Shown piece after piece: positions 12,939 through 52,479 of a stretch of 64,000 nt of DNA. Each line of letters opens with the position of its first letter. Position 1 is the first letter of the stretch. Location: NCBI GenBank assembly GCA_964188305.1, contig OZ076885.1; one strand, given 5' to 3'. The position numbers and the translations under genes were made by a program. The notes under the pieces were generated by a model. It saw only the letters and a list, made by a program, of their open reading frames with translations, was not told where the DNA came from and made no database searches. The stretch is from Podarcis bocagei (taxonomy: Eukaryota).

Positions 12939-13987
12939 GTAAGTTGCACAGTGTTTCTTCATAATAAGTTGCTTGGTGTGAAGTGCTCCTAGGACTAATT
13001 TAAGATGTGGATTCTTATATTCTATTCTTGACACCGTAAAACAATGTGCTGGACGTCAGATATTGGGGACTGGAGCATCAGTTACTAACTATTCAAAGTA
13101 AAGCTTTATTAATATTAGGTATTTGTTAGACGCTTTAGTTCTGTTTATATTCTGCCACATTTATCAAATGGCACCAAAAATATCTACTTCACTTCCCAAA
13201 TTCCCTTCACTAGCTGAGAAGTAAAACCTTGACTACCTTTCAGTTGATGCTCTAAGCAGGGGTCTGAAATTTTTGGCCAGTTGTAATTGCCAGGATCCTT
13301 CCCCCTGCTGATTGGGTGGAGGCAAGCACCTGTGCTCAATAATAAAGAAGTTCCATCAACCTTTCTCTCCTACATCAACAAGAGGTAGGGAGAGCACATT
13401 TCAAAGAAGCACAGAGCCCCAAGGCTACAACATCAGCCAATTTTTCAGAAGGAAAAACATAGTTAAGTTTGGAGCAGCAAATTGCACTGAGACTTTGAAT
13501 AGCAGCATATCTCCAAATGCTTGTGTGAACAGGTGAGTGAGTACCTGGTGCCAGAAGCCCAATACTGTAGGGCCCATTCATGCCTCCAGGGGGAGAGAAC
13601 TTTTCAGTTGAGGAGCCACAACAGAGAGAATTCTATCCCATGTCAATGTACAACTGCCAACAATAACCAGCAAAAATAGTAAGAAGCATCTCTCCTGCTA
13701 ATCTAAGGATCTGGGATGGTTGGTAATTGTTGAAGGCTGACTAATTTTTATAGTTTAAGTTATAGTTTTGAGATGGTAGTTTAATAACGTTCAGTTAAAC
13801 AGCAAAATAAAATAACAGCTGAGAAGAGAGACCAAAACAGTGAACATGGAACAATTATAGAAAAATAATAGCAAAATATGAAACTGCATTCTCCAAACTC
13901 TGGTAAATTTGTTTAGATATTGTTTGAAGTATATTGCTTGATGGATTTGCAAAATGTAATAAATTGTGTGCATCTTCTCTGGTATAG

Positions 13988-14115
13988 AGAAGACCAGGTG
14001 AATTTTCGTGGATTCATGAGGACTTTGGCACACTTCCGACCCATTGAGGATAATGAAAAAAGCAAAGACCAGAATGGGCCAGAACCACTTAATAGTCGGA
14101 GCAACAAGTTGTACT
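13988..14115 (+). CDS. CHP1: CHP1 exon 4
   Basis: tatag|AGAAGAC...GTACT|gtaaga; 128 nt; EDQVNFRGFMRTLAHFRPIEDNEKSKDQNGPEPLNSRSNKLY. Confidence 0.97.
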
Positions 14116-15223
14116 GTAAGACATTTTTAATTGGACATCTATTCAGGCTAATTGTACTGCTTTGTATTCTTCTTTGTAATCCTGCAGCTTGGAATCTGTT
14201 CCTCTTCTTTTAAACTTAGTTTAAATCTGGATACAAATCTTATGGAAGCAAGAGTAGAAAGTTATTTAAGTGAAAGTGGATTTTTGTCACTTTTGCTGGC
14301 TGTGGCTGATGGGAGTTGTAGCTCAGCCATCCAATTGAATTTCCATTTTCTTTCCTCCTTCACACTCCCAAAATCTACTCTGGATTACCACCAGAGTCCC
14401 TCATTACCACCCCCAACTGTTTTTGAGGGTGCACAGGAACAGGAAATTCCATTGTGTGCCTGGAAGTCTGTTGTGTGAGTGGTGCTACAGTGTTGGGCAC
14501 AGCCAGTTATTTCTGTCCTAATGTAAAAAAGCCTATAACCAAGCTGAAGTACATGGTACTGAAATAATTGTATTTGTAAAACACTGTGCACATTGATGGT
14601 GCTACTTTAAATGAATCATCAGAATATTTTTATCTTCCATGACCCCATATTTTACTTTATAATATTCTTAGATTTACATAAGATACTCAACAAATCTTAA
14701 ATTATTGGTAAAACTGTAGAAGCAGGCTGACTTTCCGTGACTCCTGGTAAATATAGGACATTCTATATAAGCATTCTATAAATTACTGTGTGATAGGAAA
14801 AAGAAATCTGTTTAATGTGCTAGCATGTATCAGTAACTGGTCAAAGAAAAAGAAAGATCCCAGAATTTAAGCATAAATATTTTTAGTACAGGCACCTCCC
14901 CATTCGCACATGATCTGCATGCGTGCGACTGCTGAAACATGCCTTTTTTGGCGCCCAAAGGGGGTGGATAAGGCTGGAACATACTTGCTTGTGTCCCAGA
15001 GCAGAACCCCTGCGTAAGCAGGGATTCCTCTGTATATCATTTTTTCCCTTATCCAGAAATTCCCTACCAAAATGTGACAGTTTGTTTACTTTTTCTTTTC
15101 TTTTGTATTTTTACTCAGTATTCTGCCATTTATGGCAGTTCCTAAGTAACACTACTGATTCAACAGTCTGTGGCTTTTTAATGTGTTCATGGGAAGGGGT
15201 TATTGTTGTTCTTTGTTCTTCTT

Positions 15224-15357
15224 CATAGAATTGGAGAGTTGTAAGGTACTGCGAGGGTCATATAGTCCAATCCCCTGCAGTGCAGAAATCTTTTGCCCAG
15301 TGTGGGGCTCGAACCCATGACCCTGAGATGAAGGGTCTCATGCTGTATGGATTGAGC
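15224..15357 (-). mobile_element. tRNA-Lys-derived SINE with CR1-like tail (POM/Squam2-like)
   Basis: Minus strand has a tRNA-like head with GGTTCGAGCCC and ends ATTCTATG; similar to 21479-21619. Confidence 0.7.
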
Positions 15358-15457
15358 CATGTAGAAGAGGGTATTATGTTATGTGTTTTGATTTTGTAAA
15401 CTACCCTGTGAAGGGCAGTATAAAATAAATAACCTTGAATTTAATTATTTCCTTTAG

Positions 15458-15519
15458 TTGCTTTTCGGCTATATGATCTAGATAAAGATGACAAGATTTC
15501 TCGAGAGGAACTGCTTCAG
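15458..15519 (+). CDS. CHP1: CHP1 exon 5 (EF-hand 3)
   Basis: tttag|TTGCTTTT...TTCAG|gtaggt; 62 nt; (F)AFRLYDLDKDDKISREELLQ. Confidence 0.97.
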
Positions 15520-17028
15520 GTAGGTTTAGCTTTTGCAGCCCATAAATTAATGCATTTTTTTCCGGATGACTGTCTTATTTAGCCCTTAAGGTAAAGTCTG
15601 GTTGAATGATAATACTAAATTATTATAATATATAGGCATTATATAACAATATAACTATAGTAGCAGCAGAGGTAAGAAAAGACTTTGCCAATCTCTCCCC
15701 TCCATTTTAAATCCCCTCACTCACACAGATATTGCTCAATCTTAATCTCTCGTCTGCCTAGGCTGTGTGACCCTGTTCGATGCTAGGAACAGGATTGTGT
15801 AGCCAGTGCAGGATTAAACCCTGTTCAGTAGTGATGTCAGCTCATGGGCAAATGGGTGTGGTTTCGGAAAAACAGCTTGACGGCTCAAATTGGCACACAG
15901 GCCAAACATTCCTCACCCAATGTATGCCATGAGGTTAAACTCTCCTTGCCACCAGCTATAACAATAAAAAATATACTCTGGTTCAAAACCAGCAGCCGGC
16001 CCCAATCCTATAAAGCTGTGCTCTTGGTGGTGGGGAAAGGTATTCTGTGAACCCCAAACACTGCTACAAATGCTGAAGCCCAGAACAGCCCAGAAATAAC
16101 CTGTGAAGTATCTTGTAGCACTGGAAAAAGTACTTAAAGGTTTGCACACCATGGTATGCCATAGTTACAAACTATTAGGGCTTATCATGAAGCTCTTCTG
16201 GTTGTTCTAGAGAGAACTAGCCCACAAGTACTGGTTTTCACATAAAGCTAAGCTATTAGTGTGGTTTGTTTGACAAACTGAGGAGCAAGGTGGGCATGAT
16301 TTGAGCATTTCACACCAAAGTGCTGTTCATTCAAAGAATACCATACTTGGTTTGTGTAACAATGGCTTACTTTATTTTATACTTTCTGGATGTCCCATAA
16401 TCATATTATATAAATAGTTGTGTTCTGTGTTATAAATCAAGCATTGCTAGGGGTTGTTTCTTTTTGCTTTCCAATATCTTATCAATTCTTATCAATAAAA
16501 ATTTTGGTGTGGCATGAGCAAATTTTTACTCTAAAAGGGTGGCCCAGAGAAAAAAAGCGGAGAACTTTCTGATAATTGTTAACTTGCTGATCTGAGAATT
16601 CTTGAGATGAAAGTTCTATTTTTAAGTGGTGCACTAGATGTTATTCAATGAACCTGGACTGATCTCCTTATTTCTAGAAAGTTTCCCTAAACTGCCTCAA
16701 TGTACTTCATTTGAGGCAGTGCAGTAAATGGTGGTTTGTGCCACAAGTCAAGGTGTATAGTACCTAGCAGCCAAGGACAGCTAAGGTATTTTGGCACCTG
16801 AATCAGGAAATGTCCCAAGCACCTCTCCTTGGGAGCAATAATATAATAATTAAAAATTGCTGCTGTTTTGTGATATTTAAAACCAGCTGCCTGATTGGGC
16901 TGGTCCTGGAACTTTACTTGGTTGACTTAAAATAGTAGCTTTACTTGTTTGGTGCCTTCTTAGCACTTACAGCATATTCTTTGTTAAACACTAGCATTGC
17001 ATTCTTTTGGGGTTTCTGTATACTGCAG

Positions 17029-17151
17029 GTTTTGCGGATGATGGTTGGCGTAAACATCTCGGATGAACAGTTGGGCAGCATTGCTGACAGAACAATCCAG
17101 GAGGCTGATCAAGATGGTGACAGTGCAATCTCCTTTGCAGAGTTTGTTAAG
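17029..17151 (+). CDS. CHP1: CHP1 exon 6 (EF-hand 4)
   Basis: tgcag|GTTTTGCGG...TTAAG|gtcagg; 123 nt; [41 protein letters not shown]. Confidence 0.97.
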
Positions 17152-17750
17152 GTCAGGAAACAATGTTTAATATGGCAAACCTAATTAAGTGCTAGGATTG
17201 CCGAATCAGATGTGCAATCAAATGAATAGGAGGCTTAGGTGCATAATTTCTTCAGTTATTTTGCTATTTCCCATATCTGAACATAAATTGGCAGAGGTGT
17301 GCTCTTCAGCTTCATAACAATTGCAATTTATCTTATTTGCTTAAATGATTCTTGTTAGACACATTAGCTTTTCTAAATATTTTTAGCGTGTGACAACATT
17401 GCATGCTGTTCCAAGGCATGGTCTGTGGGTACATGATACAGGAGCCTTTCTTGAAATTAAGCTGATTTAGTTTGGTCAGTGCTTTGATTAGCCCAGGGAT
17501 AATCTTGAATTCCATAAATGCAATTAAATACACTCCAAATGCAAGTGTTGCTAAGTACAGCTTTCATTTTCCATAAAATATATTACTGATGACCTCTAGG
17601 TCAAGATCTACAAAAAATAGTTCTGTAGCACAAGAGGATATGCAGTAGGAAAGCTGACTAGAATGGCTTCCTAAGACAGGACTAAAGTCTAAATGTTGAG
17701 ATAGAATTCGATTCCTGTGACAAATGGTTAACAATTCTACTTTTTTGCAG

Positions 17751-17804
17751 GTTTTGGAGAAGGTGGATGTAGAGCAAAAAATGAGCATTCGATTTCTTCA
17801 CTGA
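17751..17804 (+). CDS. CHP1: CHP1 exon 7, coding part to the stop codon
   Basis: ttgcag|GTTTTGGAG; VLEKVDVEQKMSIRFLH followed by TGA. Confidence 0.97.
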   Translation, partial: VLEKVDVEQKMSIRFLH

Positions 17805-21619: not shown

Positions 21620-22599
21620 CTAGGAGACAACAGAAAATTGTCCCATATAGCAAACACCTCTTCTGTTATGGTGCAACAACCAGAACAACAATCTTAAAAC
21701 TTGTGCAGGTCTCTAGATAGCTTCCTACAGGATATTCCCCCTAAAGTATAGTCACAGTACCAACACCATTATGAAACTAAGCTTTCAGGGTGCTATCATG
21801 CAGCCCAAACATGGGACTTCAGAATTTTTATAGTGCCCCCCCCGAAAATTACTGTCAGATCATACCTGTACCCACTGATCACACCAGGAAAAAGGGAGAG
21901 CTAGCAATTCACAGCGCCACCTAGGAGCAAAAATGGAGAATCTGAGGTACAGATCCCATGTGAATATATATGATTCCTACACAAGTTATTGATGGTGGTG
22001 GGTGACAAATCCCTTCTGAAAACCCAGAGGGTTTATTTTTGAGATCTATTTTTGCAAAATGGTGGAACGAGGAAGTGCAAGATTCGGTCTGTGGAGACAA
22101 GTGTGATCTGAGTTTTGATGATGGTTTTGGTCTACATTTTCTGTGCAGTTGTTCCAACTGTGTTTCAAGAAAGCATTCCCAACCTGCCAGAGCAAAAAGC
22201 TAAGCAGTCTGATTTCTACTGAGGAAGCTCTTTCTTAAGTAGGGCTGGCGTGAATGTACCACCCTTTATATAATGCTTATTCTCCCCCGTGTAATTTGCA
22301 GGACACCCAGAACTAAAGCTGAAAGAACTGTTTAGGTTGTAAGTGGCAGGGCCAACCCAAGACATTTTGGCAAACCACAAAATGGCACCCTCCCTCCCTG
22401 CCAGTGAAGAAGGGGTGAGTGAAGATCTAGACCAGAAACGGGAGGAATCTGCCTGCCTGCCTCTATGCCTGAGGCGGTTGCAGCACCTTGCCTTGTGGGT
22501 GGGCCTGGTGTGTTTAGGATTGAAGCCCGGTTATAGTTCCCTATCGGCCCATCAAGTAAGATCGCAAAAGATCCCGCTCTACATTCCCCATTCAATTTG

Positions 22600-23900
22600 G
22601 ACGCGCTCACTTGAGCAAATTAGTGGCAGCGGGCACGAGCATCCTACTGAGCGAGGAGGAGGAGGAGGAGCAGCTGCGGGGGGAAATGTAACAGAATAAA
22701 CAAAAGTACAATTTCCAATTTGCGCATTCCCGCCACCGCGCACAACCCCTTCCTTCCTTTAGGAGGCGTCCTGAACGACTGAGTACACCGAACGCCTAAC
22801 ACCCGCCTCCCGGTCATCCCACTTCTTCAACGCGGCAATAGGACTCGCGCGGAGGAAGGCGTATACCACATCGCGGTTGGCCAATCGCCTCTCCGTGTCC
22901 AGCCGTTTAGGGGAAGCCTACCCAATGGCAACCCAAAGCGGAGAAGTGAGTGACAGGAGAGCGGCCCACTCGGTGGGACCCGCGTTCTGTAGAACGGCCG
23001 CTGCGTCGCCCTGCGCCGGCCTCCCATTGGGCGCTCGAAGTAAGGAGGGGAAGATGGCGGAGTGAGGGGGAAGGAAGGAGAGCGCCGTGGGCTGCGGCCC
23101 TGGGGCCTTAACTGAGGTAAGACAAGGCGGGCTCAGGGGCTTCGGTGGGGAAGGTCCGTGGGCACCAGGGCCCGCTGGACCGAAAAAACCAACCTGGAGC
23201 CTGGAGCTCACTTGGCGAAGCCCGTCCGTTGAGCCGGTCGGAACCTGCTCTCTCTTTACTTGCCTGTCCCGGTTATGTGTCGCTGGAGAGAGACAAGTTC
23301 TGGGGTCCGGAGCGTATTCTTATTACCTCAGTTCTGGCCTTTTACCTCATAAGGGGCCTCCTTCCTCCTCCTCGTCCGGGGTTTGTGAGGGTGGAAGCAG
23401 CTCGCTTTTCTCTGCCTCCAGAGCCGCAAACTTGTAAGCGGGCTACGCCTGGAACAAGGGGGTCGAGAATCGCTGCGTGGCCTCGGTGGCCAAGCCAGGG
23501 CCATCCCCTCCTTTCCCCTTCTCCTACCTCCCCAAAGCTGGCAGGGAGCGACGGCTTGCTGGTGAGGCCGTGCACGGGCGAGGTGCTCCAGGCACCCGAC
23601 GCTGTGCAGCGGCCAAGAAAGAGAGAGACAAGGCACACCGCCTCTCTAGTTCTCGAGCGGGTGGGGTTGGCGAGGCATTGCTGCGCGTACTTGGGCCTCA
23701 CTGGGCGTCCCAGTGGCGAAACCATCTCCTGCCTTCTTTCCAGTGTTGAGAAGTGGGTTGGGGGTCGGTGCGCATTTTCCAGGGGGGTCCTCTGTAGCTC
23801 CTGTGCTTTTCAAGGGGAGGCTGGAGTTCGTCGTGCCTGCAGCCGACTAGCCCGGCCTCTAGTCATCGTTACTGCGCAGGGCCGATTATGTGTCCCCTTT
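22600..23900 (+). promoter_or_regulatory. OIP5-AS1: CpG island promoter of OIP5-AS1/Cyrano
   Basis: High GC and CpG content; CCAAT boxes at 22881, 22922 and 23026 (reverse); YY1 motif AAGATGGCG at 23051; donor GAG|GTAAGA at 23116/23117. Confidence 0.85.
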
Positions 23901-23915
23901 TCTTTCTTGAGCTGA

Positions 23916-24095
23916 CAGGGGTGCCAACTTGAATAAAATATCGTGGGGACCAGGTAAGCCCCACCCCACATAATCAATCACATTACGCATTTCCCACACG
24001 CTATTTGAATGGCGATGCCCGTCAACTTTGTGGGGCCCTGGCCCCCTCAGATATTTTATTGTGGGGTCCGAAGCCCCCAGGAGTTGGCTTCTGTG
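23916..24095. mobile_element. Probable non-autonomous DNA transposon
   Basis: Begins CAGGGGTGCCAACT and ends with a degenerate complement, AGTTGGCTTCTGTG. Confidence 0.4.

Positions 24096-25909: not shown

Positions 25910-25946
<37 letters not shown>
25910..25946. repeat. (TA)n microsatellite
   Basis: Read directly; abuts the Penelope remnant. Confidence 0.97.
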
Positions 25947-25949
<3 letters not shown>

Positions 25950-29200: not shown

Positions 29201-32200
29201 TTTTTAAAAGCTCTCAATCTTTTCTTACCCAGGGGAAAACATTCTTGTGGTTGCAGTCAAAGAATCAGGAGTCAGAAAATTACAGTAGTCTTATGCAACA
29301 GTAAGTAAATATGGAAAGGTGGTGTTAAGCTGAATTGACAGAAATTATTTCAGGTCCTTGGATAGAAATCTATAAATGTGTAAAGTCGGATAAAAGTATC
29401 TGGGTGTTTTCCACTACCCACTTGAAAGCTTTTTTCCAGCAGAGGAGAAGTGGAGTCTTGGATATGTTTACACTGCCCTGCTCGGTTACCTAAGTGGGCT
29501 CAGCAACGTCTCTCCAAATTCACTTCCTGCCAGTTGGACTGCAGGTTGACAGTTATCACTCTCTCTCACTAGATGAACGCATGGGAGAATGGCAACCCAG
29601 ATTTTCCTTTTATTTTTTCTTCCATCAGTCTGCCTTTCTGTGCTCCCCCCTTTCTCCATCTTAGCAGGATGAGTCTGCCAACCCTCTCTGGAGTCATCCG
29701 ACAAGGGAAGGAAGCTGGGTCTCCCATTTCCCCTCATGACATGAAACCAACTCATAGTTGAAGTGTGCTGTATTGAAATGATGAAACACTCACCAACTGC
29801 TCACAGTTTCTGTTTATTCTCTGAGGTTTTCTTCCTCTGGCAATCTTTTTATTCCATTGCAATATCTGAATTAATTAGCATTTATCCCTGAAATAGGTTT
29901 ATTTCATACATCTTGAATGATATACCAGGTAGACTTCTAGCACTGCTCATAATGTATTTAGCATTGGCCACAGCAATCAGGATCTGTTCTTGGTGTGTGA
30001 AACCTGAGGGGTCCCAGAATAAGAACTGCTTGGAATACTATGGGGGGGCGGTGGTCACAGACACTGTAATTCACCTGTAAAACAATTCCTCCAAATCTTT
30101 AAAAGTTCCAAGGTTCCCATAAAATGTATATGTGAAGTCAGTTTCAACTTAATTTAGAGTGAAATTACTTTCTCTTTTAATTAGTTAATTTGTGTGTGTG
30201 TGTTTCCAGGTCCTTTCCTGTCGACCCAACACAGGCTGCTAAAGGAGCTTTGACTGCTTCTGGTGAAGAAAACTCATTCCTTTATCTCCATGAGGGAAAA
30301 TGAAGAAGCACTGCTTATTTTCTGCTCCACTCCTTAACATGAATTGGAGATGTAAAGCCTGTATTATAGAAAAAATACTACTGTCCTTGCAGAGCAACTG
30401 AAATTAATGGCTGACATTTCACTGAAACATGCAAACTTTTTGTTCAGAGTTTTTGCACTCTATAAATGATTTTGCATATAGATAGAGGCATAACCCTAAT
30501 TTGATTGGCATTTCCCCCCTTTCAAACTACCTTGGTAAAATAACTGCCTACTCTCAACATAGCATTTAGAGAAGCGAGAAATTGATATATCCTTGGAACT
30601 TGTTACACAAACCTTTAAAGAAAATATTGTGCAGAAATAAAAGGATATACAGGTGTACTTAAAATGAGGAATAACTTCTTAAAAAGGAAAAAAAAAACAG
30701 CTTGCGAAATTGCCCTGTTGGAATTTTTCTCCTTTTAAAAGTAGCCAATTTATAGGTGTCCATCTTGATGCTACTATGCGAAGCAGTTGAAGCACAGTAG
30801 CATTTAGTAATTTTGTTCACTGTTTTGAGTAGACTATTAAAAAACAAAACTTGCATATATAAATTTACATAATTGCTGGAAAGGAGAGGTGATCCTGTGA
30901 GTTGCTGCTTTTCTAGCAAGATCCTTCCCAAGGGGTTGAAATCTTGAAACCACCCCAGGAGCAATGGGTTTTACATGGTATCCTCAGTCTTCCTAGGGAA
31001 TTCAGCAACAAAAGGAATAATACCTTTCTCCAAGCTTTTATCCAAAGGCACCAACTGATAGTGTAAAATATATGTGAAATTTCCCACCAGTTGGATGAAC
31101 AAAGACAACACATGCTCAGAAAGGGCTTCTTCACTAATTTTGTGGGTCACTGGAAGTTAAGGTGGAAATTCTGTTTCTAACATGTTTACAAAAGATGCTT
31201 TGTCTCAATTGCACATGATTCATATAGGACATTTTCTTTAGCATGGAATAATAGCTGATTTATTAGCCACACCTTGCAAGGGTAGATTGATTCCTGGTTT
31301 TAGAAAAGTCTCTCCCGCTTCCTTATGCTGAAGCCCTCAGCACTGCACCTTCAGTCTTACTGAAAATGTGAGTTTAAAATCTGCCAATGGCTTCAAAATA
31401 TTTTCAATCTGGGTAAAAAAATGGGAGTGCATGTTATAATGGTCAGTCTTGGTTATCAACATTTTCAGTGCTACTTGATGTCTGGTTTGAGGTAGCAATG
31501 GCAATATTTCATGTCATGGAAAACAGCGGCTGTTTGGGGGTATTTAATAGTTTTGAAAGGAACATCCCAAGCTAAATACTGGTATTTGCTCATCACTTAA
31601 TCTTATGTTCCTTTTATATAATAAAAGATTCACATAAATACTTAGGAAAGCTTATTCAGATGCTTTCCTTAATTCAAATCAGGTTTTTTTTAATGGGATG
31701 TTTAATTGAAGATTATCAAACAGGTAAATATTTATAACTACTGAACATAATCATATTTATGACTTGGGTCAGCTTGCTGTGGGGAAATTGTCATGGTTGT
31801 CATTTAGATTGGCTTTGAAGTATACTTAAATCCTAATTCAAATAGAAATCCAGAAATAAAAGTAGTTGGATTTCCTTCTAGGTTCTTCTGAACAGGAATT
31901 CCTGTTTAATTTATTGGGATTTTAGATATAGGGTTAGGCTTCTTAGTTAAACATTCTCTCATTCTGGAACTGAAAATTCAGAAGACATCAAGTGTAGTGA
32001 TGATTTGCTTCTATGTTGGTAGACTTTATGTTGTCTTCCCTATGTACTTCTCTCAGATTTAATTTGTAAAAGAATATGCTGGCACAGAGTGAAAATGTTT
32101 AGTTTCCCTAAATTGTCAGGATAGATATAAGAGAAAGTGGCCATATCAGTTGCACAAAATTCCAGCAAAGAACAACTCCCCCATCCCCTTTCCCTCTAGA

Positions 32201-32402
32201 TCCCCTGACTACATGAGGACTCAGTTTAAAAACTTGGAGAAATGAGTGCTGTACATGGCCCAAGAAACCCGTTTGTAGTACTTCTCCTGTAGCATCTTAA
32301 AAGTACTGTGTCAAGGCAATACTGCCTTAATCTTTTTATTTTACATTTTGATCTGCATCTGTTTATGTTGGCAGGAAATCTTTCCCTTATGAAAAACAAA
32401 TA

Positions 32403-32418
32403 CCGGGCACGTGCAATA
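32403..32418 (+). promoter_or_regulatory. OIP5-AS1: miR-25/92-family 8mer site with 3' supplementary pairing
   Basis: GTGCAATA at 32411-32418, plus CCGGG at 32403-32407 complementary to miR-92a nt 13-17. Confidence 0.75.
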
Positions 32419-32481
32419 GTATAATATATACATATAAATATATTTTAATACTTGTGGACAAAATGTTACAAGTTGTTTGAG

Positions 32482-32507
32482 AACAACAAAATCACCAATG
32501 TCTTCCA
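32482..32507 (+). promoter_or_regulatory. OIP5-AS1: Extensively complementary miR-7 site (TDMD trigger)
   Basis: AACAACAAAATCAC-CAAT-GTCTTCCA versus the miR-7 reverse complement AACAACAAAATCAC-TA-GTCTTCCA. Confidence 0.96.
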
Positions 32508-35500
32508 TTTTGAGATGTGTATAGTTCCATAAGCATTAGTGCTTTGTAGCAAAACTGTAGTGCCATGTTAGGATCAGTGCATGAGCCTAGTAGTACTTTT
32601 TTTACAATTTCAGAGTGACAAATTAACAAGGCTGATGGTGTAATTCATAAGAAACTGACAAGATTATGGTTATGGGCTAAGGATGCAGTGTCCTTTCTAG
32701 GCAATGATAGCATATATTGGTGAATAAAATCAGTAGCATGAGGAGTGCATGGATCTTGAATCTGTAAGCAGGTAGAAGTGCACTTCAAGGAAACTACAGT
32801 TGAAACAGTCCTTAACAAATCCTTTTTTGAGCAAATAATATTTTGCTGCAATGGGAAAATTCACTGATCTCTTGGACTAAGAAGTTTCACAGATTTAAGT
32901 GTGCATAAGGCTAATCTTTGCCACAACATGTTCTCATAAAATGTCCCTCATATATGACTGTTCTCCATTCAGAAGAGCCTATAAACTCTTACTCAGTTAC
33001 CCACTAGTTGCATATTTGCTCATAAGTACCCTTATGTTAGAGCAGCACATCATCTATCAAGTTGAAAAAATGACTAAATTACAAATAATAACACTGCTAC
33101 TACTATTCAAGATTGGTAGTATTCATTTTTGAAAGCAAATGATTCTCATTTTTCTACTTCCATAGAAAGCACCTGAAGGAGTTTGCTGTTTTAAAAAATT
33201 TTAAATCATTGCAGTACAACTATTTGGGTCACTAAGATGTCTCCCTGCTTATATTATCAATTTGCTTTTAGTTCAAATAAGTGAGATCAGCAATTCAGGC
33301 ACCTGATTTTTCTGTGCAGATCCTGTAGTCTGGACTGCTGTGATTCTGTTTTTAGAAAACAACTACTTGTAGCTTAAAGAGGATACTGCATCTTTTTCTT
33401 GGTCTTGTCTGTAAATGGCTACCTTGGTGAGGAAAAAAATATTTCTGGTTTTGGTTTACCATTGGCTAAAAATTCATAGGAAACATTTAATTAACCACAA
33501 AACAAGAGATCTATGTTTAAAGGTCTCTGCCCATTCTCCCTTGAAATTTGGGAAGGTGGGTTGTTTACAAATGAGCAGTGAGGACCTGAGCTCAGCCAAG
33601 GTTCTGTTGGAAAGAAATGTATCTGTCCCATTGAATGAAATAGTTTTTAGTGCTTGGGAGAATCAATTGATGGAAAAATACCTCTGAAACTGGAATGCAA
33701 AATAGCACAGTATGTAGGGGGAAAGAATCCCTGATGCAAATAAAGCCATAAGATGACTTAATCAATAGAACTTTAGTAGCAATAACTGTTTGCATGTAAT
33801 AGGAACTACTTGCATTAGCAAGTATTGTATAATAGAATAAATGGTACTAACCAAATAGGTTTGTGGTGCTCTGTGTTGCAGGGAGTTGCCTGACATGATG
33901 AGTTTCTCTTTAAAATGTTAGGAAATTCCTCAAAGGAAGTTGGCACTTGAATGCTTTATTGAGGAGCCTGTTTAAAACTCCTGCATAGCTCCCCCCCCCC
34001 CCAATTGATGCAACTAGGGCAGAAACTTGTTGTGGTCATGGGCTAAAGATGCAGTGTGCATGAGAAAGTGGATGAACCCCTGTCCTCCTTGTCAATAGAT
34101 AGCATGTAGTTGAACTTCTGGTGTGAAAGGAAACTCTTCAGAGACTGTGAACAGGGCCAGGTTCAACCTAAACATGCAATTTAGATTTGACCGTGGAAAC
34201 TTGTTGCCATTACCTAAAGCTGGTTAGATGTGTCAAATTTTTGAGGAATGTTGGCAAGGTACAAAGCATCCTAGCACCTAGCAAGTGTTGTGTCTCCTGA
34301 AAATGTTATTTTTTCTCTTTAAAAAACCTTTTAAAAACTTGTACGCCTGTTACGTGGTTTCACTCTTAATTATAAAAGCTACTTTTGAGTTTGGAAGCTT
34401 CTATTCTAGATGGGTATGCCTGGCAATCTTACCCTCACCACTCTATAGAGTGCAGTTCATACCTCTTTAAAATGCAACTTGCACTAACCTAGTATGCATG
34501 TAAGACCATGTAAACTGTAAGCCTAATATGTAACTCTGCCTTAAACAGGATTCCGCTGAAGTAGAACAGATTCATCTACAAGGTTGGGATGTATACTTGA
34601 AGGCTTTACCTTTATTGTTTTCCTTAATTGGAAGGAGTTATATCCCAGCTGGTGTGTTTCTGCCAATAGAAGGCTTTTGAATAGGGATCAAGGCTATTTT
34701 GGGTAGCTCCCCTTCCCTCAACAGCTGCCCATACTGTTCAAAGGGCCCACCAATTCTCCAGGTCAGATTTGAGTGGGAAGGAGGAATCACTGAAGAGTGC
34801 CTCAACCCTTTTTCCACTGATGGCTCCACTGTACTAAAGAGCCTTCCATAAGCAGAATATGGCCAGAGGGTAGCCAGTATCTATCATCAGTCTGATTAAT
34901 ACAGCCACATGTTCAAGTGGATGGAAGAAGCCCATATTTTAAAAGTAGATATATATTCTGTACAGAACGACCCCTATATATTCATTCTGTAATATGAGCT
35001 TTACTAATGGTTTCCAAAATAATGTTTGAAATCTGAATCGAGGAGACTGTCCTTTATATGTGAAAAAACAGACAACAAAAACCTGTGACTATTTTGTTCA
35101 CATCACAAAATATACAAGGCACTTTTTACTGTTTTCAAACAAACATGATTCTAGGGCTAAGGAAATTTGCACTTTGTTAACCATTCTGAGCAAACTGGCA
35201 GAATCCGAAAGGCGTATCTCGGCTATGCCACCAGTAGGGCTTGCTTTGCTCTAAATTTATTTTGAGTTGCTGGTTTGCAGATACTTTTCAATTTGCAAAA
35301 CTGGTGCTTGACTGACATAGTGCTGCTGCTACCCAATTTAATAAATAATGAGCTTTTTAGCTTGGTATCTGGATAAGTGTGTGAGCTTCATACATGCAGG
35401 ATTTGCTGTTGTGGTGCTTAGTCAGAAACATTTAGGATGTGGTTAACTGTTTGAAGATGCTTGGCTATCTTGCATAACCTCATAATGGAGAGCTTTGCTG

Positions 35501-37662
35501 CCTAGATCTATAGAAATGAGGGGTTCTGTTACTCTCCAGAGCAGCCTTTGCCAGCCTGGTGCCCTCCAGATGCTTTGTGCTGTAGGTCCCATCAACCCCA
35601 GCAGCACATCCAAAACAACTGGAGGACACCTGTGAGAGGCGGCTTCAACAAATTGCACTTAATCAGTTTGCACCTCAGTAACTGTGGTATTTAAACTCCT
35701 GAAGGTTTAGCACTGAAATTTGTTTCCGTAAGCAGTTAATGAGGGGAAAGATCTTTCTATGAAGTGGCTCTTCATGGCACATAAGCAGCACTTGGGGTAT
35801 ACATGGTGTATACACCACCACCTCGTTTCCATTTATTCTCCTAACAGCCTTTATTCTATCAGTGGAGAACAGGATTTCATTCTAAGTATATTAGTGCCAT
35901 TCTTTATGAATGGTTGCAGGGGGCTCTTCTTTAATAGTCTGTCTCTATTCTACATGTGCACTAGTTTTTGTGATAAAATCCCCCTTACTTGACTTCTCCC
36001 TTTTAGACCTTTTATTCTTGCTTTGCACTTTGAAGAACAGTAATTATTGAGCAGTAGAAGTCCAAGCACAATACATGGGTGCCAATAAATGTATTTTCCA
36101 AACAGGCTTCTGGGATATAGATGGTAAGTTTGCAATTGGTAGTGTTGGATCTTTGCAACAGGATTTGGAGGCCTAAGCTGAACTGAATTTTTGTACCATG
36201 CTTTATTAAGTACTTGAAGATTGAGGGTGGGGATGGAGGAAGGACAAGGAGTTTATGCCCTCACCCTGTACACAGAAAGGCAATGAGTTCTCCCTGCCCT
36301 GAAATGTAGAGGAATGGTCAGCTAAGTGGTGCTCCCCAAAGACTGCAGGAATAAAGGCTTAATAGGGTCTCTGCTGAACAAAGAACTCATTTGTATGAAA
36401 GGACTCTTATGACAGGAATGTGGAAAACAAAATACTAGAGAATGAGAATATGTCATGTGATGGGGCAGGGGAGAATGCCCCAAGGTGAAGATTTCCTACA
36501 TAACTAGATGAGAAGGAAGCAGGTTTAGAGCTGGAGATTGGTTCTATCTGAAGGGGGGGGGCAGGATGAAAGCATTCGAGTTTGATCACTTGCTAGTTGG
36601 TTTTAGATGGAATTGTCAACTTTCCCTAATTACAGCACAATGAACATTCCACAGAGTTTAGCATCTAAATAGTTGCAACTTATCTGTCCTCTGCCATCTT
36701 TGACAAACCCTTGGAAAGCAGATGAGGTTGTGAAACTCAAGTATGGAAAACATACATGGAAAATTGACAATGGCACAAGCACATAGGCTCACAAACCAAG
36801 TCTTTTATAGAGGTAGTATTCTAATTATGCATGATTAAGATGTCTAGTGTTATAGTTATTACCAGTAAATTGATATATGCATTTATACATAATGAAGCAA
36901 TAGGAACTAATATACCAATAGCTTGAACTTACTGCTTTGATTCTCAGATTTTGATTTTAGAGAACATTCTGTCTCTTTAAAGGAGGCAGAATGTACAAAT
37001 AAGAGAAGCATGACACCAAAACTGTGTATTTGAAAGAAGAATCAGCAGAATGAGCCCTTTTGACCTCTTACCAGGTTCATTGTGTTCCCTTGAGCCTACA
37101 TAATATGAGCATGGTTGGTGGTAAGATGGGTTTCTTGGCTGCTGCAATTGTACAAATAAAAAAGGTGCAGAGTTTCAGAGTACAGAGAAGGCACTAGATG
37201 AACGCCAAATAGGGCAATAGCAAAATGTTGTATGTAGTAGGATTTTTCAGGTAACAAGAAGGAACCTGGATCACAACCTGTTGGCTGCAAATAAATGAGA
37301 ATTTAGGTGGATGAAATCATTAAGCAGTCCTTACTCTTCAGGTATTGAGTTTAAATGACAGGTTCTCCTCGCCAGGTATCTCTCACCCTGTTAGGCAGCT
37401 ATACCAAGATGAACTGGTTTCAGACCAGCATTAATATACCTTACAATAACTAATCTGAAAATGGCAAAGTTTTGCTTTAGACACAAAGCAAGTTAAAGCT
37501 TGCTAAGTAGGAGTGGAGCTTGCTAACTAGATTCAAGAGAGTAAATGGCACCCCCATAAAAATTATTGGTTTAGTTACAAAAAAAGTAAAAAGTGGGTGC
37601 ATTTAATGGTAGAATATATATGCCGAATACATATTAAATATTAAGTAGAGGATGGTAGAGGA

Positions 37663-38028
37663 GGGACGCGGGTGGCGCTGTGGGCTAAAGCCTCAGCGCC
37701 TAGGGCTTGCCGATCGAAAGGTCGGCGGTTCGAATCCCCGCGGCGGGGTGCGCTCCCGCTGCTCGGTCCCAGCGCCTGCCAACCTAGCAGTTCGAAAGCA
37801 CCCCTGGGTGCAAGTAGATAAATAGGTACCGCTTACCAGCGGGAAGGTAAACGGCGTTCCGTGTGCTGCGCTGGCTCGCCAGATGCAGCTTTGTCACGCT
37901 GGCCACGTGACCCGGAAGTGTCTCCGGACAGCGCTGGCCCCCGGCCAATAGATGTGAGATGGGCGCACAAACCCCAGAGTCTGTCAAGACTGGCCCGTTC
38001 GGGCAGGGGTACCTTTACCTTTACCTTT
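37663..38028 (+). mobile_element. Young full-length Sauria/Squam1 SINE
   Basis: CpGs intact; A/B boxes present; (ACCTTT)n tail; 14-bp TSD TAGAGGATGGTAGA at 37646-37659 and 38029-38042. Confidence 0.92.
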
Positions 38029-39189
38029 TAGAGGATGGTAGAAGCATAGCTCTTGTATCTAAACCTGGACTAGAAAATTATTTTCCTAATGTGAAGGTGC
38101 TGCTTAAAATAAACACTGAGTTTAAAGTTCCTTAACTAGATTATGGCTATACTAGTTTCTGCAGAGCAAGTTACAAACACTTCTTCATATCAAAGTTTGC
38201 TTTCTCATAGATCTGAAAAAGGATTTGTTATGGCAAATCTGCATTTTATGTTAGTGGTTATTTTCCCAATCATTTATTTTAAGCTTGTTATAGAGGCCAT
38301 ATTTTTTGCATTGCCAGTCTCAGTGATTAGTAGCTGCCAAATAGATGCATGAATATTGGAGACGTGAGTGAAGGCTTGTAATGACATCAGTTTGACTTCC
38401 CCTCTGATTTCATGTTAACATGAAAAGACTCCATAGTATTGTATCATTGAATTGTTTTTCCCAAACTCTGTCCCTCTTGTAGGTTGTGATTTAGGGCTCT
38501 GCTAATTAATTTCTTCTTTCAGAGCAAAGAAAAGATTGTCTTTGCAAATGCATAGGATAACTGATCATAATAAAAGGATTGTGAAAGCTAGAGTCTGGGA
38601 AAATGTACAGAAACATTGTATAAATTTTAGAAGTAGGCTGACATTTTGTTAACTCACTTGAACAAGCAGAACAGACAAGGAAGGTATATGCCACTGCAAA
38701 CTATTTACTCCCATTGCACAATTATGTAACAAATACCACAAATCTACCCCTGTATATATCTGAAGATTTCCAAAAGGCAGCTTGCTTTTATATCTATGCA
38801 TCTTTTGGGGAGGGAAAGAGGGTGTTAAAATTATTCTTTTGACACTGTAAACAATAATTGTTCAAAACTGAACCTGGAAACTCTGCACCTGTATACAATT
38901 TTTTAGCAATAAAGCAGCATGGGCTGAGAATGCACTTAAAATGCCATTGTGTCATTTCTTCTAGGACGAACTCTTGAAACGATAGAAATGTAGGTTCACA
39001 TATTTCAGTTTGCCTTCATTGTGGAGCAGGAGAAAGATGTTTAATCATTGCAAGCTTATATGATTGCGGTGAAACCCCAGCAGCTTTTTAGCACATATGA
39101 GCCACTTCATACTCTCATGTATTTCTCAACAATTATGTGATTGGTTGTCATGTGTTTTGCAGTGCCTCTTCTCCCTCTTCTTCCCAATA

Positions 39190-42012: not shown

Positions 42013-43229
42013 CTGAAAAACAGGTTAAAAGACAATACATTTTGAAATTAGCTGATCAGTCATAGGAATGTATGAATAAAGGATAAATAACTTATATTGC
42101 AATTTTTCAGAATATTGTGTTCACTTTTTTCAACATTTTATGTCTACTCCAGCAAGAGAAATCTAAATATTCAAAAGTGAAGATTATTAATAATAACAAC
42201 CATGTAATAGTATTTTGCCAGCATCCTGATTTCAATTATATCCTAACATGATATAATCTCCTGAAATTAATAGGTTTCCACAATCTCATACTGCAGTACA
42301 TTTCAGATTCTTAACAATGTATTTTGAAGGACCTAATTATTCAATATACAACACTTATTTTATTTTCAAAAAAATAACTTCTCGCCTCTCCTGTCCCTTC
42401 CTCAAGTAGGCTAAACTTTTGTGGTCATAGATCACTTATATTTTATAGCCAAGTTTTAAGCCCTTTCACACAGCATATTCAAAGGTCAATGCCTTATCAT
42501 GAAGTAATACTTAAGCAGCCAATCAACAAGTAAATGTCATCCACTGAAAAGCACCGTCTTGAGCTGTGACAATACGGTTTCTCATTCACAAGTCAAGACA
42601 CAAGACTGCATGATCATTGTTTAGCATAATAGCAAGGCTATTCAAATCCCAGGTCAGCTGTGAAGCTCACTGGGTGACTTTGGACCTGTACTTCCCACTA
42701 ACCATACAATACTGGGCTGTTGGGAATCTAAACTGGAAGGGAAGCAGTCCCCTGAGCTCTTTGTAGAGGTGATGGGATAAAAAGGGGGGGGGGACAATTA
42801 AGTGAAATCACCCTTAAGATCCAGAAAATATGAATGGTACTTTCCAGTGGCTAATTGAATAAATCTCCTAAACTTTTATTCCCACTGGAAAATTAGTTTT
42901 AGATCAGCTCTCATAACAGCATGGTGTTACTATTGGAATAGTTATTATCAGTTGTATTCTGCTTCAGTTGTACGCCTGCTTCTACCCAAACATTAGCTAC
43001 ATGTTGTGCTGCTGTAACTACCACAGCATAGTGTCTACAAATAATGCCATCAGCCAGTATCTCTTTTGGAAAAGCCTTTTTTAATCGTTTGCATGCCTTT
43101 TTATGAAACCTTCATATATAAACTTATGCAGGATGTCTTGTATGTGTCAGTTTGTTACCCTTCGTTTTACTGGAGTTTATCCGCATGACTTAACCATCCA
43201 ATCAGTTCAATATGCATCTGGACACTAAC

Positions 43230-43349
43230 CATATGATGTTGTCCTTCAAAAGGCAAAAGAAGCCTCGCAGGTGAGCCAGAGGTTTTGAACAATAGAGTCT
43301 GAAACCTATTCCCGCTTTACATTCTCGACAGTACAACATGTTGTAGGTG
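43230..43349 (-). CDS. OIP5: OIP5 exon 3 (second CxxC of the Yippee/Mis18 domain)
   Basis: 120 nt; TYNMLYCRECKAGIGFRLYCSKPLAHLRGFFCLLKDNII. Confidence 0.94.
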
Positions 43350-43518
43350 CTGGGGGGAAAAGACCATGTGTGAAGTCAGCATTCCATAATCTGATTTATG
43401 ACCAAACTAGGGGCTTCAGCCACCATAAGCAACATTTTTGGAATTTGCCCTAGAAAATCCAGAATTATTCAGTTATAAAAACCAAATTTAGAGTATGCAT
43501 CTTTACATTAGTAGATAG

Positions 43519-43652
43519 CGGGCATAGGCAAACTCGGGCCTCCAGATGTTTGGGACTACAATTCCCATCATCCCTGACCACTGGTCCTGCTAGCTAGGGA
43601 TCATGGGAGTTGTAGGCCAAAAACATCTGGAGGGCCGAGTTTGCCTAGCTTG
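43519..43652. mobile_element. Palindromic hAT-type MITE
   Basis: TAGGCAAACTCGGGCCTCCAGATGTTT...AAACATCTGGAGGGCCGAGTTTGCCTA; near-palindromic throughout. Confidence 0.8.
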
Positions 43653-44129
43653 GCCTATAGCTTCCAAATTTACAGGGGAGAGGGGTGTTGCAAAAACCTG
43701 TATGAACATATTCCTCGTGATCAGAATGCAGCATGGTTTCCTTACTACAGAATATGCATCCTTAAACAAAATATGCTGCATTCATCCAAAATATTTACAA
43801 AGAAGTCCTATGGGGGCAGCGGTGGGAGAATCCAAGGTGGATGAAAAACCAAATTGAAAGCTCTGCGGAGCTGGTAGGGCAGAAAATTGGGGTGGGGAAC
43901 AAGGAGGATGTTTCCGAATTTCTTCTTTCACTGGTTCCCATAACATCTTATTGTTTTCACAGTCAGAAAGCTAGAGAAGGCAGAAACCCTTCTCTGCCCA
44001 GATCTTTCTCTATCTATACTCTTCTAGGACCCCAGGATACCCGCCCCAGGAAACGAAGGAAAGAAGAGATGCAAAAAGAGCCGTTTCTCGGAGACAAAGG
44101 ATGCTCACTGGGAATGAAATAAACATTTA

Positions 44130-44295
44130 CCGTATTTTTCGCTCTATAACACGCACCCGTCCATAACACACACATAGTTTTTAGAGGAAAATCCGTAGGC
44201 ATGCCACCCGTAGGCATTCCCTCCATAACACGCACAGACATTTCCCCTTACTTTCTAGGAGGAAAAAAGTGAGTGTTATGGTGCAAAAAATACGG
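44130..44295. mobile_element. Tc1/mariner (pogo-like) MITE
   Basis: TA|CCGTATTTTT...AAAAATACGG|TA; termini related to those of 50559-51287. Confidence 0.82.
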
Positions 44296-44490
44296 TACTT
44301 AAGCCAGGCATTTTATTTTGAAAAAGTACTAAAAAAACCAAGTCTGGTAAATAAAGTATTATTTATTTCATTAGCCACCTTCCCCAAGTCACATGCAAAT
44401 AAAACCAAAAGGTGGCATAGGGTTCCAAGATATGCTTGCTCTTCTAAGCATCTGATGTAGTAAATTTTAATTAAAAAAACTACAACTCAC

Positions 44491-44557
44491 CATCCTTTGA
44501 GGTCTCCCTCAATACAGACCATCAAGTTATCTTCCACTACAACATCATTTGTAACCT
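44491..44557 (-). CDS. OIP5: OIP5 exon 2
   Basis: 67 nt; ttttcag|AG...TG|gtgagt; (K)VTNDVVVEDNLMVCIEGDLKG(C). Confidence 0.94.
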
Positions 44558-45017
44558 CTGAAAAGAGAAGCAGAGCTTTTGCAGATTGAATAAAGCTAAG
44601 CATTCATCAATGCATTACATTCAAACACTTTATTTCATTTAATATTTATTCAGGGACCTGTTAAGACACCTGTAAATTATTCAGATAGATCTCATAGAAA
44701 CAATTTATTTTCATGCATGAAAAATAAGAGACGGCTAGTGCTAGAATCACTGCAACATGCACTTTAGGTTTAATATATATTATTACAGGCATATTTAAAT
44801 TGGTACTGAAGCATTTTACACAAGTTAAGATCTAAATTTAAAATGTCACTTTCAGAAATCATAGTAGAAAAGGGACTCTCACTGAAGATTGCAAAAGTGG
44901 ATTCCTGTTATGATAGAAATTAATGTCATACTTTGGAATTCACACCATTTATTTAGATCATGGCTTGTTGTTGATTTATTTAACATCAGTTAAGATTAAT
45001 ATTAACATTGGTTAAGA

Positions 45018-45074
45018 TGGCGTGCTCTGGTCCATGGGGTCACAAAGAGTCCGACACGACTAAACAACAACAAC
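45018..45074 (+). mobile_element. Bov-B/RTE LINE extreme 3' end
   Basis: TGGCGTGCTCTGGTCCATGGGGTCACAAAGAGTCCGACACGACT followed by a (CAA)n tail. Confidence 0.8.
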
Positions 45075-45314
45075 ATTAACCAGTTTATTGGTTTGGAAAT
45101 GAAAGCTTCTGAACTCCTTGTGGCTATGCCACATGAGGGGAAGAGGCAGGAATCACCCCAACAGAAGGCCCTCTCCACAGCTTATTCACATCACACTAAA
45201 TTGGTTTAGTGTGTGAATGTGGCCTTCTCAGCCTCAGAATGGTTGTGGGAATAAGGGCAAATAGAGTGTCATATATGGCCTGCGGTCTACATTCATGCTT
45301 GGCCAACCCTGTAG

Positions 45315-45316
<2 letters not shown>

Positions 45317-45389
<73 letters not shown>
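45317..45389. repeat. Compound (TC)n(TA)n microsatellite
   Basis: Read directly. Confidence 0.97.
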
Positions 45390-45391
<2 letters not shown>

Positions 45392-45885
45392 ACTGCTGCC
45401 AATACTGGCAAGGTCTCATGGAACTACATCATTTTTGTTTTTTAAATGTATTTTTATTGCTTTTATTTCTTATGCATTACATTTCAGTTTGAATTACAAG
45501 AAAATACAACATAAGAAATGAAAGCAATCAAAATCAAACAGTACCTGGCAGAAGACATCACAGAAATCATGAGCCACGACCAACATTTTTCAAGTGGCGG
45601 GGGCGGGGTGGGTTTGACCATCGGCTCAAATCTTTTAAATTCCATGTTTTGAGCTTGGCACGACCCCTACACGAATGTAACAGGTGTAATGATAACCCGT
45701 GTACATTGCCACGTGCGACAACAATCCTGCGTGTATTTAGTTGAACATCTGTGCAGCCTGATTGATGAAGAGCCCGGTGTAGCTCGAAAGTTCGCGCCTT
45801 TTCTTTTTCTAAAGAAAAGAAAGCGCCTTTCCTTTTTCGCTCCGAGGCTGCCAACCCAACACTCAAAAGAGTGCGACCCACTCAC

Positions 45886-46159
45886 TGAAGCAAACGAGAA
45901 GGCGGAGCTTCTCCTCCTGGGCGCAGAGATGAAGCGAGTCGCCCAGCACCGAACGGCAACCGCGGCACTGGTAAAGCACGCAGTCCTCCAGCCTGAGACT
46001 CCGGGAGCCCGGAAGCCGCTCCCCGGGGTTCTCCGGAGGCTTTGCGCTTTGCTGACCATGGCGGCAGCTCTTCGTCCCGGGTTCCGCCCGATCCACCCTG
46101 ATCACGCCTCCCAGTCGGGGCTCCTGGAAGAAAAGCTCCAGCTGCCGCCGCACGGCCAT
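45886..46159 (-). CDS. OIP5: OIP5 exon 1, coding part
   Basis: ATG at 46159 in context AACATGG; MAVRRQLELFFQEP...LEDCVLYQCRGCRSVLGDSLHLC...VCF; donor A|gtgagt. Confidence 0.92.
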
Positions 46160-52366: not shown

Positions 52367-52479
52367 ACTTTAAGAAAATTCACGAGGCTCAGTTCAAGAA
52401 AATGCAATCTATTGATGAATACATTGAAAGGAAAAATAAAATGATTCGCAACTTCAGCAATTCAGTTAATGAGGTCAAG
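52367..52479 (+). CDS. NUSAP1: NUSAP1 exon 6
   Basis: 113 nt; (N)[22 protein letters not shown]...EVK|gtaagg, the conserved NUSAP motif. Confidence 0.95.

What the first reader, a model, noticed from the sequence alone, without database searches (positions are those of the whole stretch)
32482..32507. Near-perfect miR-7 site: target-directed miRNA degradation trigger
Seen: an 8mer seed match plus 14 contiguous pairs to miR-7 nt 11-24, with a central loop (CAAU opposite nt 9-10) that should prevent slicing. Established: this architecture in mammalian Cyrano triggers ZSWIM8-dependent AGO degradation and miR-7 loss. The sequence matches the mammalian site as I recall it. Inference: the system operates in squamates.
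Basis: partly seen in the sequence, partly recalled or inferred. Interest (0 to 1): 0.85.

Follow-up and report, generated by a model that had tools for sequence, protein, structure and literature searches.

The report
Lizard Cyrano lncRNA miR-7 degradation site
The site is real and is the lizard copy of the well-known miR-7-destroying site in the conserved long noncoding RNA Cyrano (OIP5-AS1), so it is a correct but already-known feature rather than a discovery.

Summary
Window 32482-32507 (+) has a 14-nt block, a 4-nt CAAU loop and an 8mer. It pairs with miR-7 nt 11-24 and nt 1-8 and leaves nt 9-10 unpaired. It is unique in the window and far beyond chance.

It lies in the lizard orthologue of the lncRNA Cyrano/OIP5-AS1. 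The gene order is CHP1(+), this locus(+), OIP5(-), NUSAP1(+). The ordered short elements published for vertebrate Cyrano are present on the + strand at the published spacings; one has a single changed base.
- TISU-type AUGGCG mini-ORF at a CpG island.
- miR-25/92 site 64 nt upstream.
- Pumilio and Rbfox motifs downstream.
- miR-153 site.
- GCAAUAAA poly(A) signal.

The 26 nt equal the published human CYRANO trigger 26/26. The flanks are about 90% identical by hand count. RNA-labelled public runs hold the surrounding 3 kb.

The most likely mechanism is the known ZSWIM8-dependent target-directed degradation of miR-7. This is inferred for squamates, not shown.

After that I sent none of those letters to any search tool, so strand and splice junctions are not shown by reads.

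Novelty: already known. Interest is low. Another first-stage note on this same window (s1-354185) also named the Cyrano locus.

The parts
22001..24000 (.). CpG-rich island, the likely Cyrano promoter
   Evidence: GC 0.563 against about 0.39 in the flanks. It holds the TISU-type start element.
23050..23065 (+). TISU-like element (11 of 12 by my recollection of the consensus) with an AUGGCG mini-ORF: ATG GCG GAG TGA, 3 codons
   Evidence: LncLOOM reports AUGGCG at the very 5' end of Cyrano as a conserved 2-3 aa ORF in TISU context (PMC7798263). The AAGATGGCGG head occurs 0.02 times per simulated window.
23040..23116 (+). Predicted exon 1. The start is approximate. The donor is GAG|GTAAGA, with GT at 23117.
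   Evidence: Sequence. This is predicted only and is not shown by reads.
29629..38930 (+). Predicted large terminal exon. The 5' edge is uncertain: acceptor candidates end at 29233, 29629 and 29665. The 3' end lies about 15-25 nt after the poly(A) signal.
   Evidence: RNA-labelled runs hold 0.63-0.79 of the sampled words of 31500-34500 (organism A: RNA 0.79, DNA 0.80). They hold only 0.25-0.39 of 27500-31499 (organism A: RNA 0.25, DNA 0.63). Acceptor candidates are and the poly(A) signal.
32403..32418 (+). miR-25/92 8mer seed match (32411-32418), with a CCGGG block (32403-32407) that could pair with the miRNA 3' region
   Evidence: it is the only GTGCAATA in the window and ends 64 nt before the miR-7 site. 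LncLOOM element 2 lies about 60 nt upstream. The first base of the published 9-mer differs here (C for U).
32482..32495 (+). 14-nt block pairing with miR-7 nt 11-24
32496..32499 (+). 4-nt internal loop (CAAU) opposite miR-7 nt 9-10
   Evidence: The wild-type CYRANO loop length is 4.
32500..32507 (+). 8mer seed match to miR-7
32518..32524 (+). Pumilio recognition element UGUAUAG
   Evidence: [quoted passage not shown]
32578..32584 (+). Rbfox motif UGCAUGA, 54 nt after the Pumilio element
   Evidence: The published position is about 55 nt downstream.
38794..38800 (+). miR-153 seed match CUAUGCA
   Evidence: It starts 112 nt before the poly(A) signal starts; the published spacing is about 100 nt.
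38906..38913 (+). GCAAUAAA: the poly(A) signal, which overlaps a miR-137 site
   Evidence: It is the only copy in the window. The miR-153-to-PAS pair at this spacing occurs 0.02 times per simulated window.
13986..17801 (+). Upstream neighbour CHP1. Coding exons lie at 13986-14117, about 15.45 kb, about 17.0 kb and 17721-17801 (the last ends at the stop).
   Evidence: E 9e-22, 43 of 44 residues identical to CHP1 residues 64-107 of PDB 7dsv. Further exons were recognised by eye.
43205..46159 (-). Downstream convergent neighbour OIP5 (Mis18-beta). Exons lie at about 45866-46159 and within 43205-43375.
   Evidence: Pfam Yippee-Mis18: E 2e-4 for profile positions 2-30 and E 2e-6 for positions 54-93, above the curated cut-off.
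52348..52482 (+). NUSAP1 exon
   Evidence: Pfam NUSAP, E 3.6e-17.

Best explanation
The stretch is the miR-7 site in the terminal exon of the squamate orthologue of the lncRNA Cyrano (OIP5-AS1). The predicted transcript starts at about 23.05 kb and ends at about 38.93 kb on the + strand.

Proposed mechanism, following the mammalian work. AGO loaded with miR-7 binds the 8mer. The 14 contiguous pairs to guide nt 11-24 pull the miRNA 3' end out of the PAZ pocket. The 2x4 internal loop prevents slicing and bends the duplex. The ZSWIM8-CUL3 ligase recognises this AGO shape, together with the flanking RNA, and polyubiquitylates AGO. AGO is then degraded and miR-7 is lost.

Shown here: the site and its pairing, the orthology of the locus, and the presence of the surrounding sequence in RNA-labelled runs. 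Inferred: expression strand and splicing, the presence of an identical miR-7 and of ZSWIM8 in this animal, and actual miR-7 degradation.
For: Site and pairing:
- The site is exact and unique.
- The duplex has 8 + 14 pairs and a 2x4 loop at -28.6 kcal/mol. The next best stretch in the window reaches -20.1.
- It matches the published human CYRANO trigger 26/26. By my hand count, about 146 of 162 aligned columns are identical from the miR-25/92 site to 57 nt past the site.

Locus:
- Gene order is CHP1(+), locus(+), OIP5(-), NUSAP1(+).
- Seven LncLOOM Cyrano elements outside the site are present in order on the + strand at the published spacings.
- The local trio occurred in 0 of 300 simulated windows. 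The 3' pair and the 5' head each occurred 0.02 times per window.
- No ORF longer than 101 aa lies in 29.8-38.95 kb.

Expression:
- RNA-labelled runs hold essentially all of 31500-34500 but under half of 27500-31499. This fits a large exon that begins near 29.2-29.9 kb.

Literature:
- Architecture and function of the site.
- Conservation across vertebrates.
- AGO-ZSWIM8 contact residues conserved across bilaterians.
Against: There is no functional data for any squamate. No miR-7 gene or ZSWIM8 gene lies in this window, so their presence in this animal was not checked.

The run kind is only guessed ('RNA?'). Strand, splice junctions and the poly(A) site are therefore predictions.

The first base of the published miR-25/92 9-mer differs here.

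In the papers I read, Cyrano-directed miR-7 loss was demonstrated only in mammals. The zebrafish knockout paper reports no miR-7 measurement.
Confidence: 0.88

Rival explanations
1. The locus is Cyrano, but in squamates the site mainly does something other than ZSWIM8-dependent miR-7 destruction. It might be a high-affinity miR-7 binding or decoy site, or a site through which miR-7 regulates Cyrano.
For: Cyrano-directed degradation was shown only in mammals in the papers I read. Cdr1as and miR-671, the mammalian partners, arose only in mammals (PMC13125240). The predicted local fold pairs parts of the site with flanking sequence, as Jones et al. report for human, mouse and zebrafish.
Against: The site is 26/26 identical to the human trigger, including the 4-nt loop. 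Changing the length of that loop reduces ZSWIM8 binding and ubiquitylation. Simple binding would not require conserved pairing out to guide nt 24 or a fixed loop. The AGO and ZSWIM8 contact residues are reported conserved across bilaterians.
Confidence: 0.08
2. The match is a chance or relic sequence in untranscribed intergenic DNA.
For: No reads could be laid, and the run kinds are guessed.
Against: The pattern appeared in 0 of 100 shuffles even with 3 mismatches allowed. The conserved ordered elements span 16 kb. The flanks are about 90% identical to human. RNA-labelled runs cover the downstream 3 kb fully but the upstream 4 kb only partly. DNA runs do not show that pattern.
Confidence: 0.01
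3. The minus strand encodes a miR-7-like hairpin gene, and the + strand complementarity is only its mirror image.
For: The minus strand reads as a miR-7-like guide with two extra central bases.
Against: The Rfam gathering-threshold scan of the whole window found no mir-7 family match and no other miRNA. Its only hit was a tRNA-like match at 21.5 kb. All the other conserved elements, including the poly(A) signal and the splice donor, are on the + strand.
Confidence: 0.01

Closest known systems
Cyrano / OIP5-AS1 (mouse Oip5os1, zebrafish cyrano): conserved vertebrate lncRNA with the miR-7 TDMD trigger site
   Same: It shares the same neighbours and orientation. It also shares a TISU-type AUGGCG mini-ORF at the start and a large terminal exon carrying a single site. 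The 26-nt site is identical to the human one (8mer, 4-nt loop, 14 pairs). The miR-25/92, Pumilio, Rbfox, miR-153 and GCAAUAAA elements lie in the same order and at the same spacing.
   Different: This is a squamate, a group absent from the 18 species used by LncLOOM. The first base of the miR-25/92 9-mer is C rather than U. There are a few substitutions and two 1-nt indels in the flanks. The predicted transcript is about 9-10 kb, within the published range of 2.3-10.2 kb. Cdr1as and miR-671, the mammalian network partners, are not expected outside mammals.
libra / NREP miR-29b TDMD trigger
   Same: It is an endogenous vertebrate transcript with a seed match plus extensive 3' pairing inside a conserved block. 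It triggers ZSWIM8-dependent miRNA loss.
   Different: It involves a different miRNA and a different locus. It is a lncRNA in fish but an mRNA 3' UTR in mammals. It is unrelated in sequence to this site.
Herpesvirus saimiri HSUR1 miR-27a trigger
   Same: It has the same trigger logic of seed pairing, a central loop and 3' pairing, and is recognised by ZSWIM8 in vitro.
   Different: It is a viral small RNA with a weaker seed site and shorter 3' pairing than the Cyrano site (RNA sequences).

Membership tests
Cyrano/OIP5-AS1 orthologue | Lies between CHP1 and OIP5/NUSAP1, on the CHP1 strand and convergent with OIP5 | tested here: met
   CHP1 exon, E 9e-22, with further CHP1 exons. OIP5 Yippee-Mis18 exons on the minus strand. 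NUSAP exon, E 3.6e-17. The human gene order comes from my own knowledge and from the gene name.
Cyrano/OIP5-AS1 orthologue | 26-nt deeply conserved core complementary to miR-7 | tested here: met
   26/26 identical to the published human CYRANO trigger.
Cyrano/OIP5-AS1 orthologue | LncLOOM ordered elements: AUGGCG/TISU at the 5' end, miR-25/92 site about 60 nt upstream, Pumilio element, Rbfox motif about 55 nt further on, miR-153 site about 100 nt before a GCAAUAAA poly(A) signal | tested here: met
   All are present in order on the + strand, at 23054, 32411, 32518, 32578, 38794 and 38906. Chance levels are 0/300, 0.02 and 0.02 per simulated window. One base of the miR-25/92 9-mer differs.
Cyrano/OIP5-AS1 orthologue | Tetrapod-conserved core of about 300 nt around the site | tested here: met
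   My hand alignment to the published 137-nt and 120-nt human fragments gives about 146 of 162 identical columns. Only this part of the 300 nt could be compared, and the count was made by eye.
Cyrano/OIP5-AS1 orthologue | Spliced, polyadenylated noncoding transcript with the site in the terminal exon | tested here: inconclusive
   RNA-labelled runs hold the region, and no ORF exceeds 101 aa. The donor, acceptor and poly(A) signal are predicted. No reads could be laid, so strand and junctions are not shown.
Cyrano/OIP5-AS1 orthologue | Cloverleaf-like local structure that partly masks the site (Jones et al. 2020) | tested here: inconclusive
   The predicted fold puts the 5' part of the site in a hairpin with a 4-nt apical loop and the seed match in a second hairpin inside a multiloop.
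TDMD trigger (ZSWIM8 pathway) | Seed pairing plus extensive 3' pairing, joined by a central unpaired region that blocks slicing | tested here: met
   8 + 14 pairs with a 2x4 loop opposite guide nt 9-10. The definition is from PMC10899785 and PMC13083262.
TDMD trigger (ZSWIM8 pathway) | Site in untranslated RNA with tens of nucleotides of flanking RNA | tested here: met
   The site sits kilobases inside a predicted noncoding exon. The role of flanking RNA is described.
TDMD trigger (ZSWIM8 pathway) | The cognate miRNA is present with a matching sequence in the same organism and cells | not testable with these tools
The literature reports that the non-seed part of miR-7 is also highly conserved.
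TDMD trigger (ZSWIM8 pathway) | Removing the site or ZSWIM8 raises the level of the miRNA | not testable with these tools
   This needs an experiment.

The most novel reading that the evidence does not exclude
The flanks of the site remain about 90% identical between a lizard and human. Yet ZSWIM8 binding in vitro tolerates scrambled flanks. The conserved core, with its miR-25/92 site and possible 3' pairing, Pumilio and Rbfox motifs and site-masking hairpins, may therefore carry a second, still unexplained function. One possibility is gating when miR-7 is destroyed. Squamates lack Cdr1as and miR-671, so they would show this ancestral function without the mammalian circular-RNA layer.
Probability: 0.25. 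Interest if true: 0.35.

Novelty: already known. Interest (0 to 1): 0.1.

Why it matters
The result confirms that the scan can recover a textbook noncoding regulatory element from raw sequence. It also gives a usable annotation of the lizard Cyrano locus: start, conserved core and poly(A) signal. Biologically it adds one more lineage to a site already described as conserved from fish to human, so it changes no open question. It has modest value as a non-mammalian amniote in which the miR-7 degradation axis could be studied without Cdr1as.

Tried and rejected
- **Reads.** The pairing and folding analyses ran in local scripts on the stored window. Two whole-window local annotation scans, ARAGORN and TRF, ran by reference. 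The human comparison was made by reading a published table and counting by eye.
- **Transcript contigs.** I tried to fetch transcript contigs through exact ORF products lying beside the site. Nothing was on record.
- **Paper ids.** Two PMC ids that I guessed for Kleaveland 2018 and Ulitsky 2011 are not held. I used the bioRxiv version and later papers instead.
- **ORF 48579-48878.** It has no Pfam match, so it is not used as evidence for NUSAP1.
- **OIP5 exon 1.** It has no PDB sequence match. Pfam supports it instead.
- **Fold significance.** It is weak, so the cloverleaf is not claimed.
- **Rejected readings.** Chance match, and a minus-strand miR-7-like gene; see the rival explanations.

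Full report
**Observation**

One search shows, at 32482-32507 on the + strand, a 14-nt block, then CAAT, then an 8-mer. A pattern with the 22 outer bases fixed and the 4 central bases free occurs once in the window on both strands, even with three mismatches allowed. It appeared in none of 100 dinucleotide-preserving shuffles.

The 8-mer is the only miR-7 8mer seed match in the window. About 2.3 are expected by chance, so the seed alone would be unremarkable. The 22 fixed bases together are not.

A local script gave these results:
- The two blocks are exact reverse complements of miR-7 nt 11-24 and nt 1-8.
- The loop is CAAU opposite guide nt 9-10.
- The duplex is 8 + 14 pairs around a 2x4 internal loop, at -28.6 kcal/mol. 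A perfect complement gives -36.7.
- The next best 30-nt stretch on either strand reaches only -20.1.

It agrees with the 'fully complementary' CYRANO RNA in Supplementary Table 1 of PMC13083262.

**Context**

There are no N in the window. The neighbouring genes are:

| Gene | Strand | Position | Evidence |
|---|---|---|---|
| CHP1 | + | 13986-14117, then exons to a stop at 17801 | E 9e-22, 43 of 44 residues identical to CHP1 of PDB 7dsv; later exons |
| OIP5/Mis18-beta | - | about 45.9-46.2 kb and 43.2-43.4 kb | Two consecutive parts of the Pfam Yippee-Mis18 domain |
| NUSAP1 | + | 52.35-52.48 kb | Pfam NUSAP, E 3.6e-17 |

From my own knowledge, this is the arrangement around human OIP5-AS1. 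Two CpG-rich islands lie at 22-24 kb and 46-48 kb.

**Independent test of orthology, beside the site**

Ross et al. (PMC7798263) list short elements that keep their order in Cyrano across 17-18 vertebrates, none of them squamates. All the elements outside the site are on the + strand here:

| Element | Position | Note |
|---|---|---|
| AUGGCG | 23054 | Inside a TISU-like context; opens a 3-codon ORF (ATG GCG GAG TGA); a strong splice donor follows at 23117 |
| miR-25/92 8mer | 32411-32418 | Only copy in the window; ends 64 nt before the site (published: about 60 nt) |
| Pumilio element | 32518-32524 | |
| Rbfox motif | 32578-32584 | 54 nt after the Pumilio element (published: about 55 nt) |
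| miR-153 match | 38794 | Starts 112 nt before the poly(A) signal starts (published: about 100 nt) |
| GCAATAAA | 38906 | Only copy in the window |

In 300 first-order Markov simulations of the window, the local trio never occurred. The 3' pair and the 5' head each occurred 0.02 times per window. One base differs from the published miR-25/92 9-mer, but the 8mer seed match is kept.

**Comparison with the published human RNA**

Supplementary Table 1 of PMC13083262 prints the human CYRANO trigger fragments. The lizard site is 26/26 identical, including the CAAU loop.

I aligned the printed 137-nt and 120-nt fragments to by hand. From the miR-25/92 site to 57 nt past the miR-7 site, this gives about 146 identical columns of 162, with two single-base indels. 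The count is by eye, because long sequences may not be typed into tools.

**Transcription**

Fourteen runs labelled 'RNA?' hold 0.63-0.79 of the sampled words of 31500-34500. In organism A the RNA share (0.79) equals the DNA share (0.80).

For 27500-31499 the same kinds of runs hold only 0.25-0.39, against 0.61-0.63 for DNA. This uneven coverage is what an exon boundary near 29.2-29.9 kb would give. Strong acceptor candidates end at 29233, 29629 and 29665.

Strand, junctions and the poly(A) site therefore rest on sequence signals only.

No ORF in 29.8-38.95 kb exceeds 101 aa.

**Mechanism**

The published work gives the following picture:
- The Cyrano site has an 8mer and 14 contiguous 3' pairs (PMC10899785).
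- Only guide nt 9-10 are unpaired, which should prevent slicing (bioRxiv 10.1101/279687).
- A ZSWIM8 dimer with CUL3 then clamps and ubiquitylates AGO.
- The wild-type loop length is 4, and changing it reduces binding and ubiquitylation (PMC13083262).

The lizard site keeps every one of these features. The paper reports that the contact residues in AGO and ZSWIM8 are conserved across bilaterians. The non-seed part of miR-7 is reported as highly conserved (PMC13125240). The same mechanism is therefore the most likely one in squamates. It is still an inference.

**Local fold**

The predicted fold places the 5' part of the site in a hairpin with a 4-nt apical loop and the seed match in a second hairpin inside a multiloop. 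This resembles the site-masking cloverleaf that Jones et al. describe. The z-scores are weak (-0.7 and -1.3), and I could not obtain their structure file.

**Novelty**

The literature already states the following:
- Cyrano is conserved throughout vertebrates.
- It arose in the ancestor of bony vertebrates.
- Its 300-nt core is conserved in tetrapods.
- Its 26-nt core is complementary to miR-7 in all species with sequence.

I found no paper that describes the squamate locus explicitly. A lizard copy is exactly what this literature predicts. The finding is correct but already known.

Another first-stage note on this window (s1-354185) named the Cyrano locus at 23045-38930, and my independently derived ends agree with it. 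A follow-up note elsewhere in this genome calls the animal a lacertid lizard. I did not test that.

Noticed in passing
window 32403-32418 (+): The conserved miR-25/92 8mer is preceded, after 3 nt, by CCGGG. This could pair with nt 13-17 of miR-92a (guide recalled from memory), giving a 3'-supplementary type site. No energy was computed.
   Followed up: partly
window 29618, 30987, 32033 (+): Three further weak miR-7 seed matches lie in the predicted terminal exon, upstream of the main site: one 7mer-A1 and two 7mer-m8. They may be chance.
   Followed up: no
window 20807-21115 (-) and 21468-21540 (+): An ORF with a GIY-YIG nuclease domain (Pfam E 6e-6), as in Penelope-like retroelements, lies next to a tRNA-like Rfam match (35.8 bits). 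ARAGORN does not call that match a tRNA. Both are probably transposon or SINE remnants between CHP1 and the Cyrano promoter.
   Followed up: partly
window 50762-51176: A GC-rich 148-bp tandem repeat has 2.8 copies at 91% match. It accounts for the cluster of overlapping long ORFs on both strands at 50.4-51.2 kb. It probably lies in a NUSAP1 intron.
   Followed up: partly
window 52001-54000: There is a strong excess of C over G on the + strand (GC skew -0.31), just after the NUSAP1 exon. It is unexplained.
   Followed up: no
window 38930-43200: The predicted Cyrano poly(A) site and the nearest recognised OIP5 exon (minus strand) are about 4 kb apart. The last OIP5 exons and its 3' UTR were not mapped, so it is unknown whether the two transcripts overlap tail to tail as in human.
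   Followed up: no
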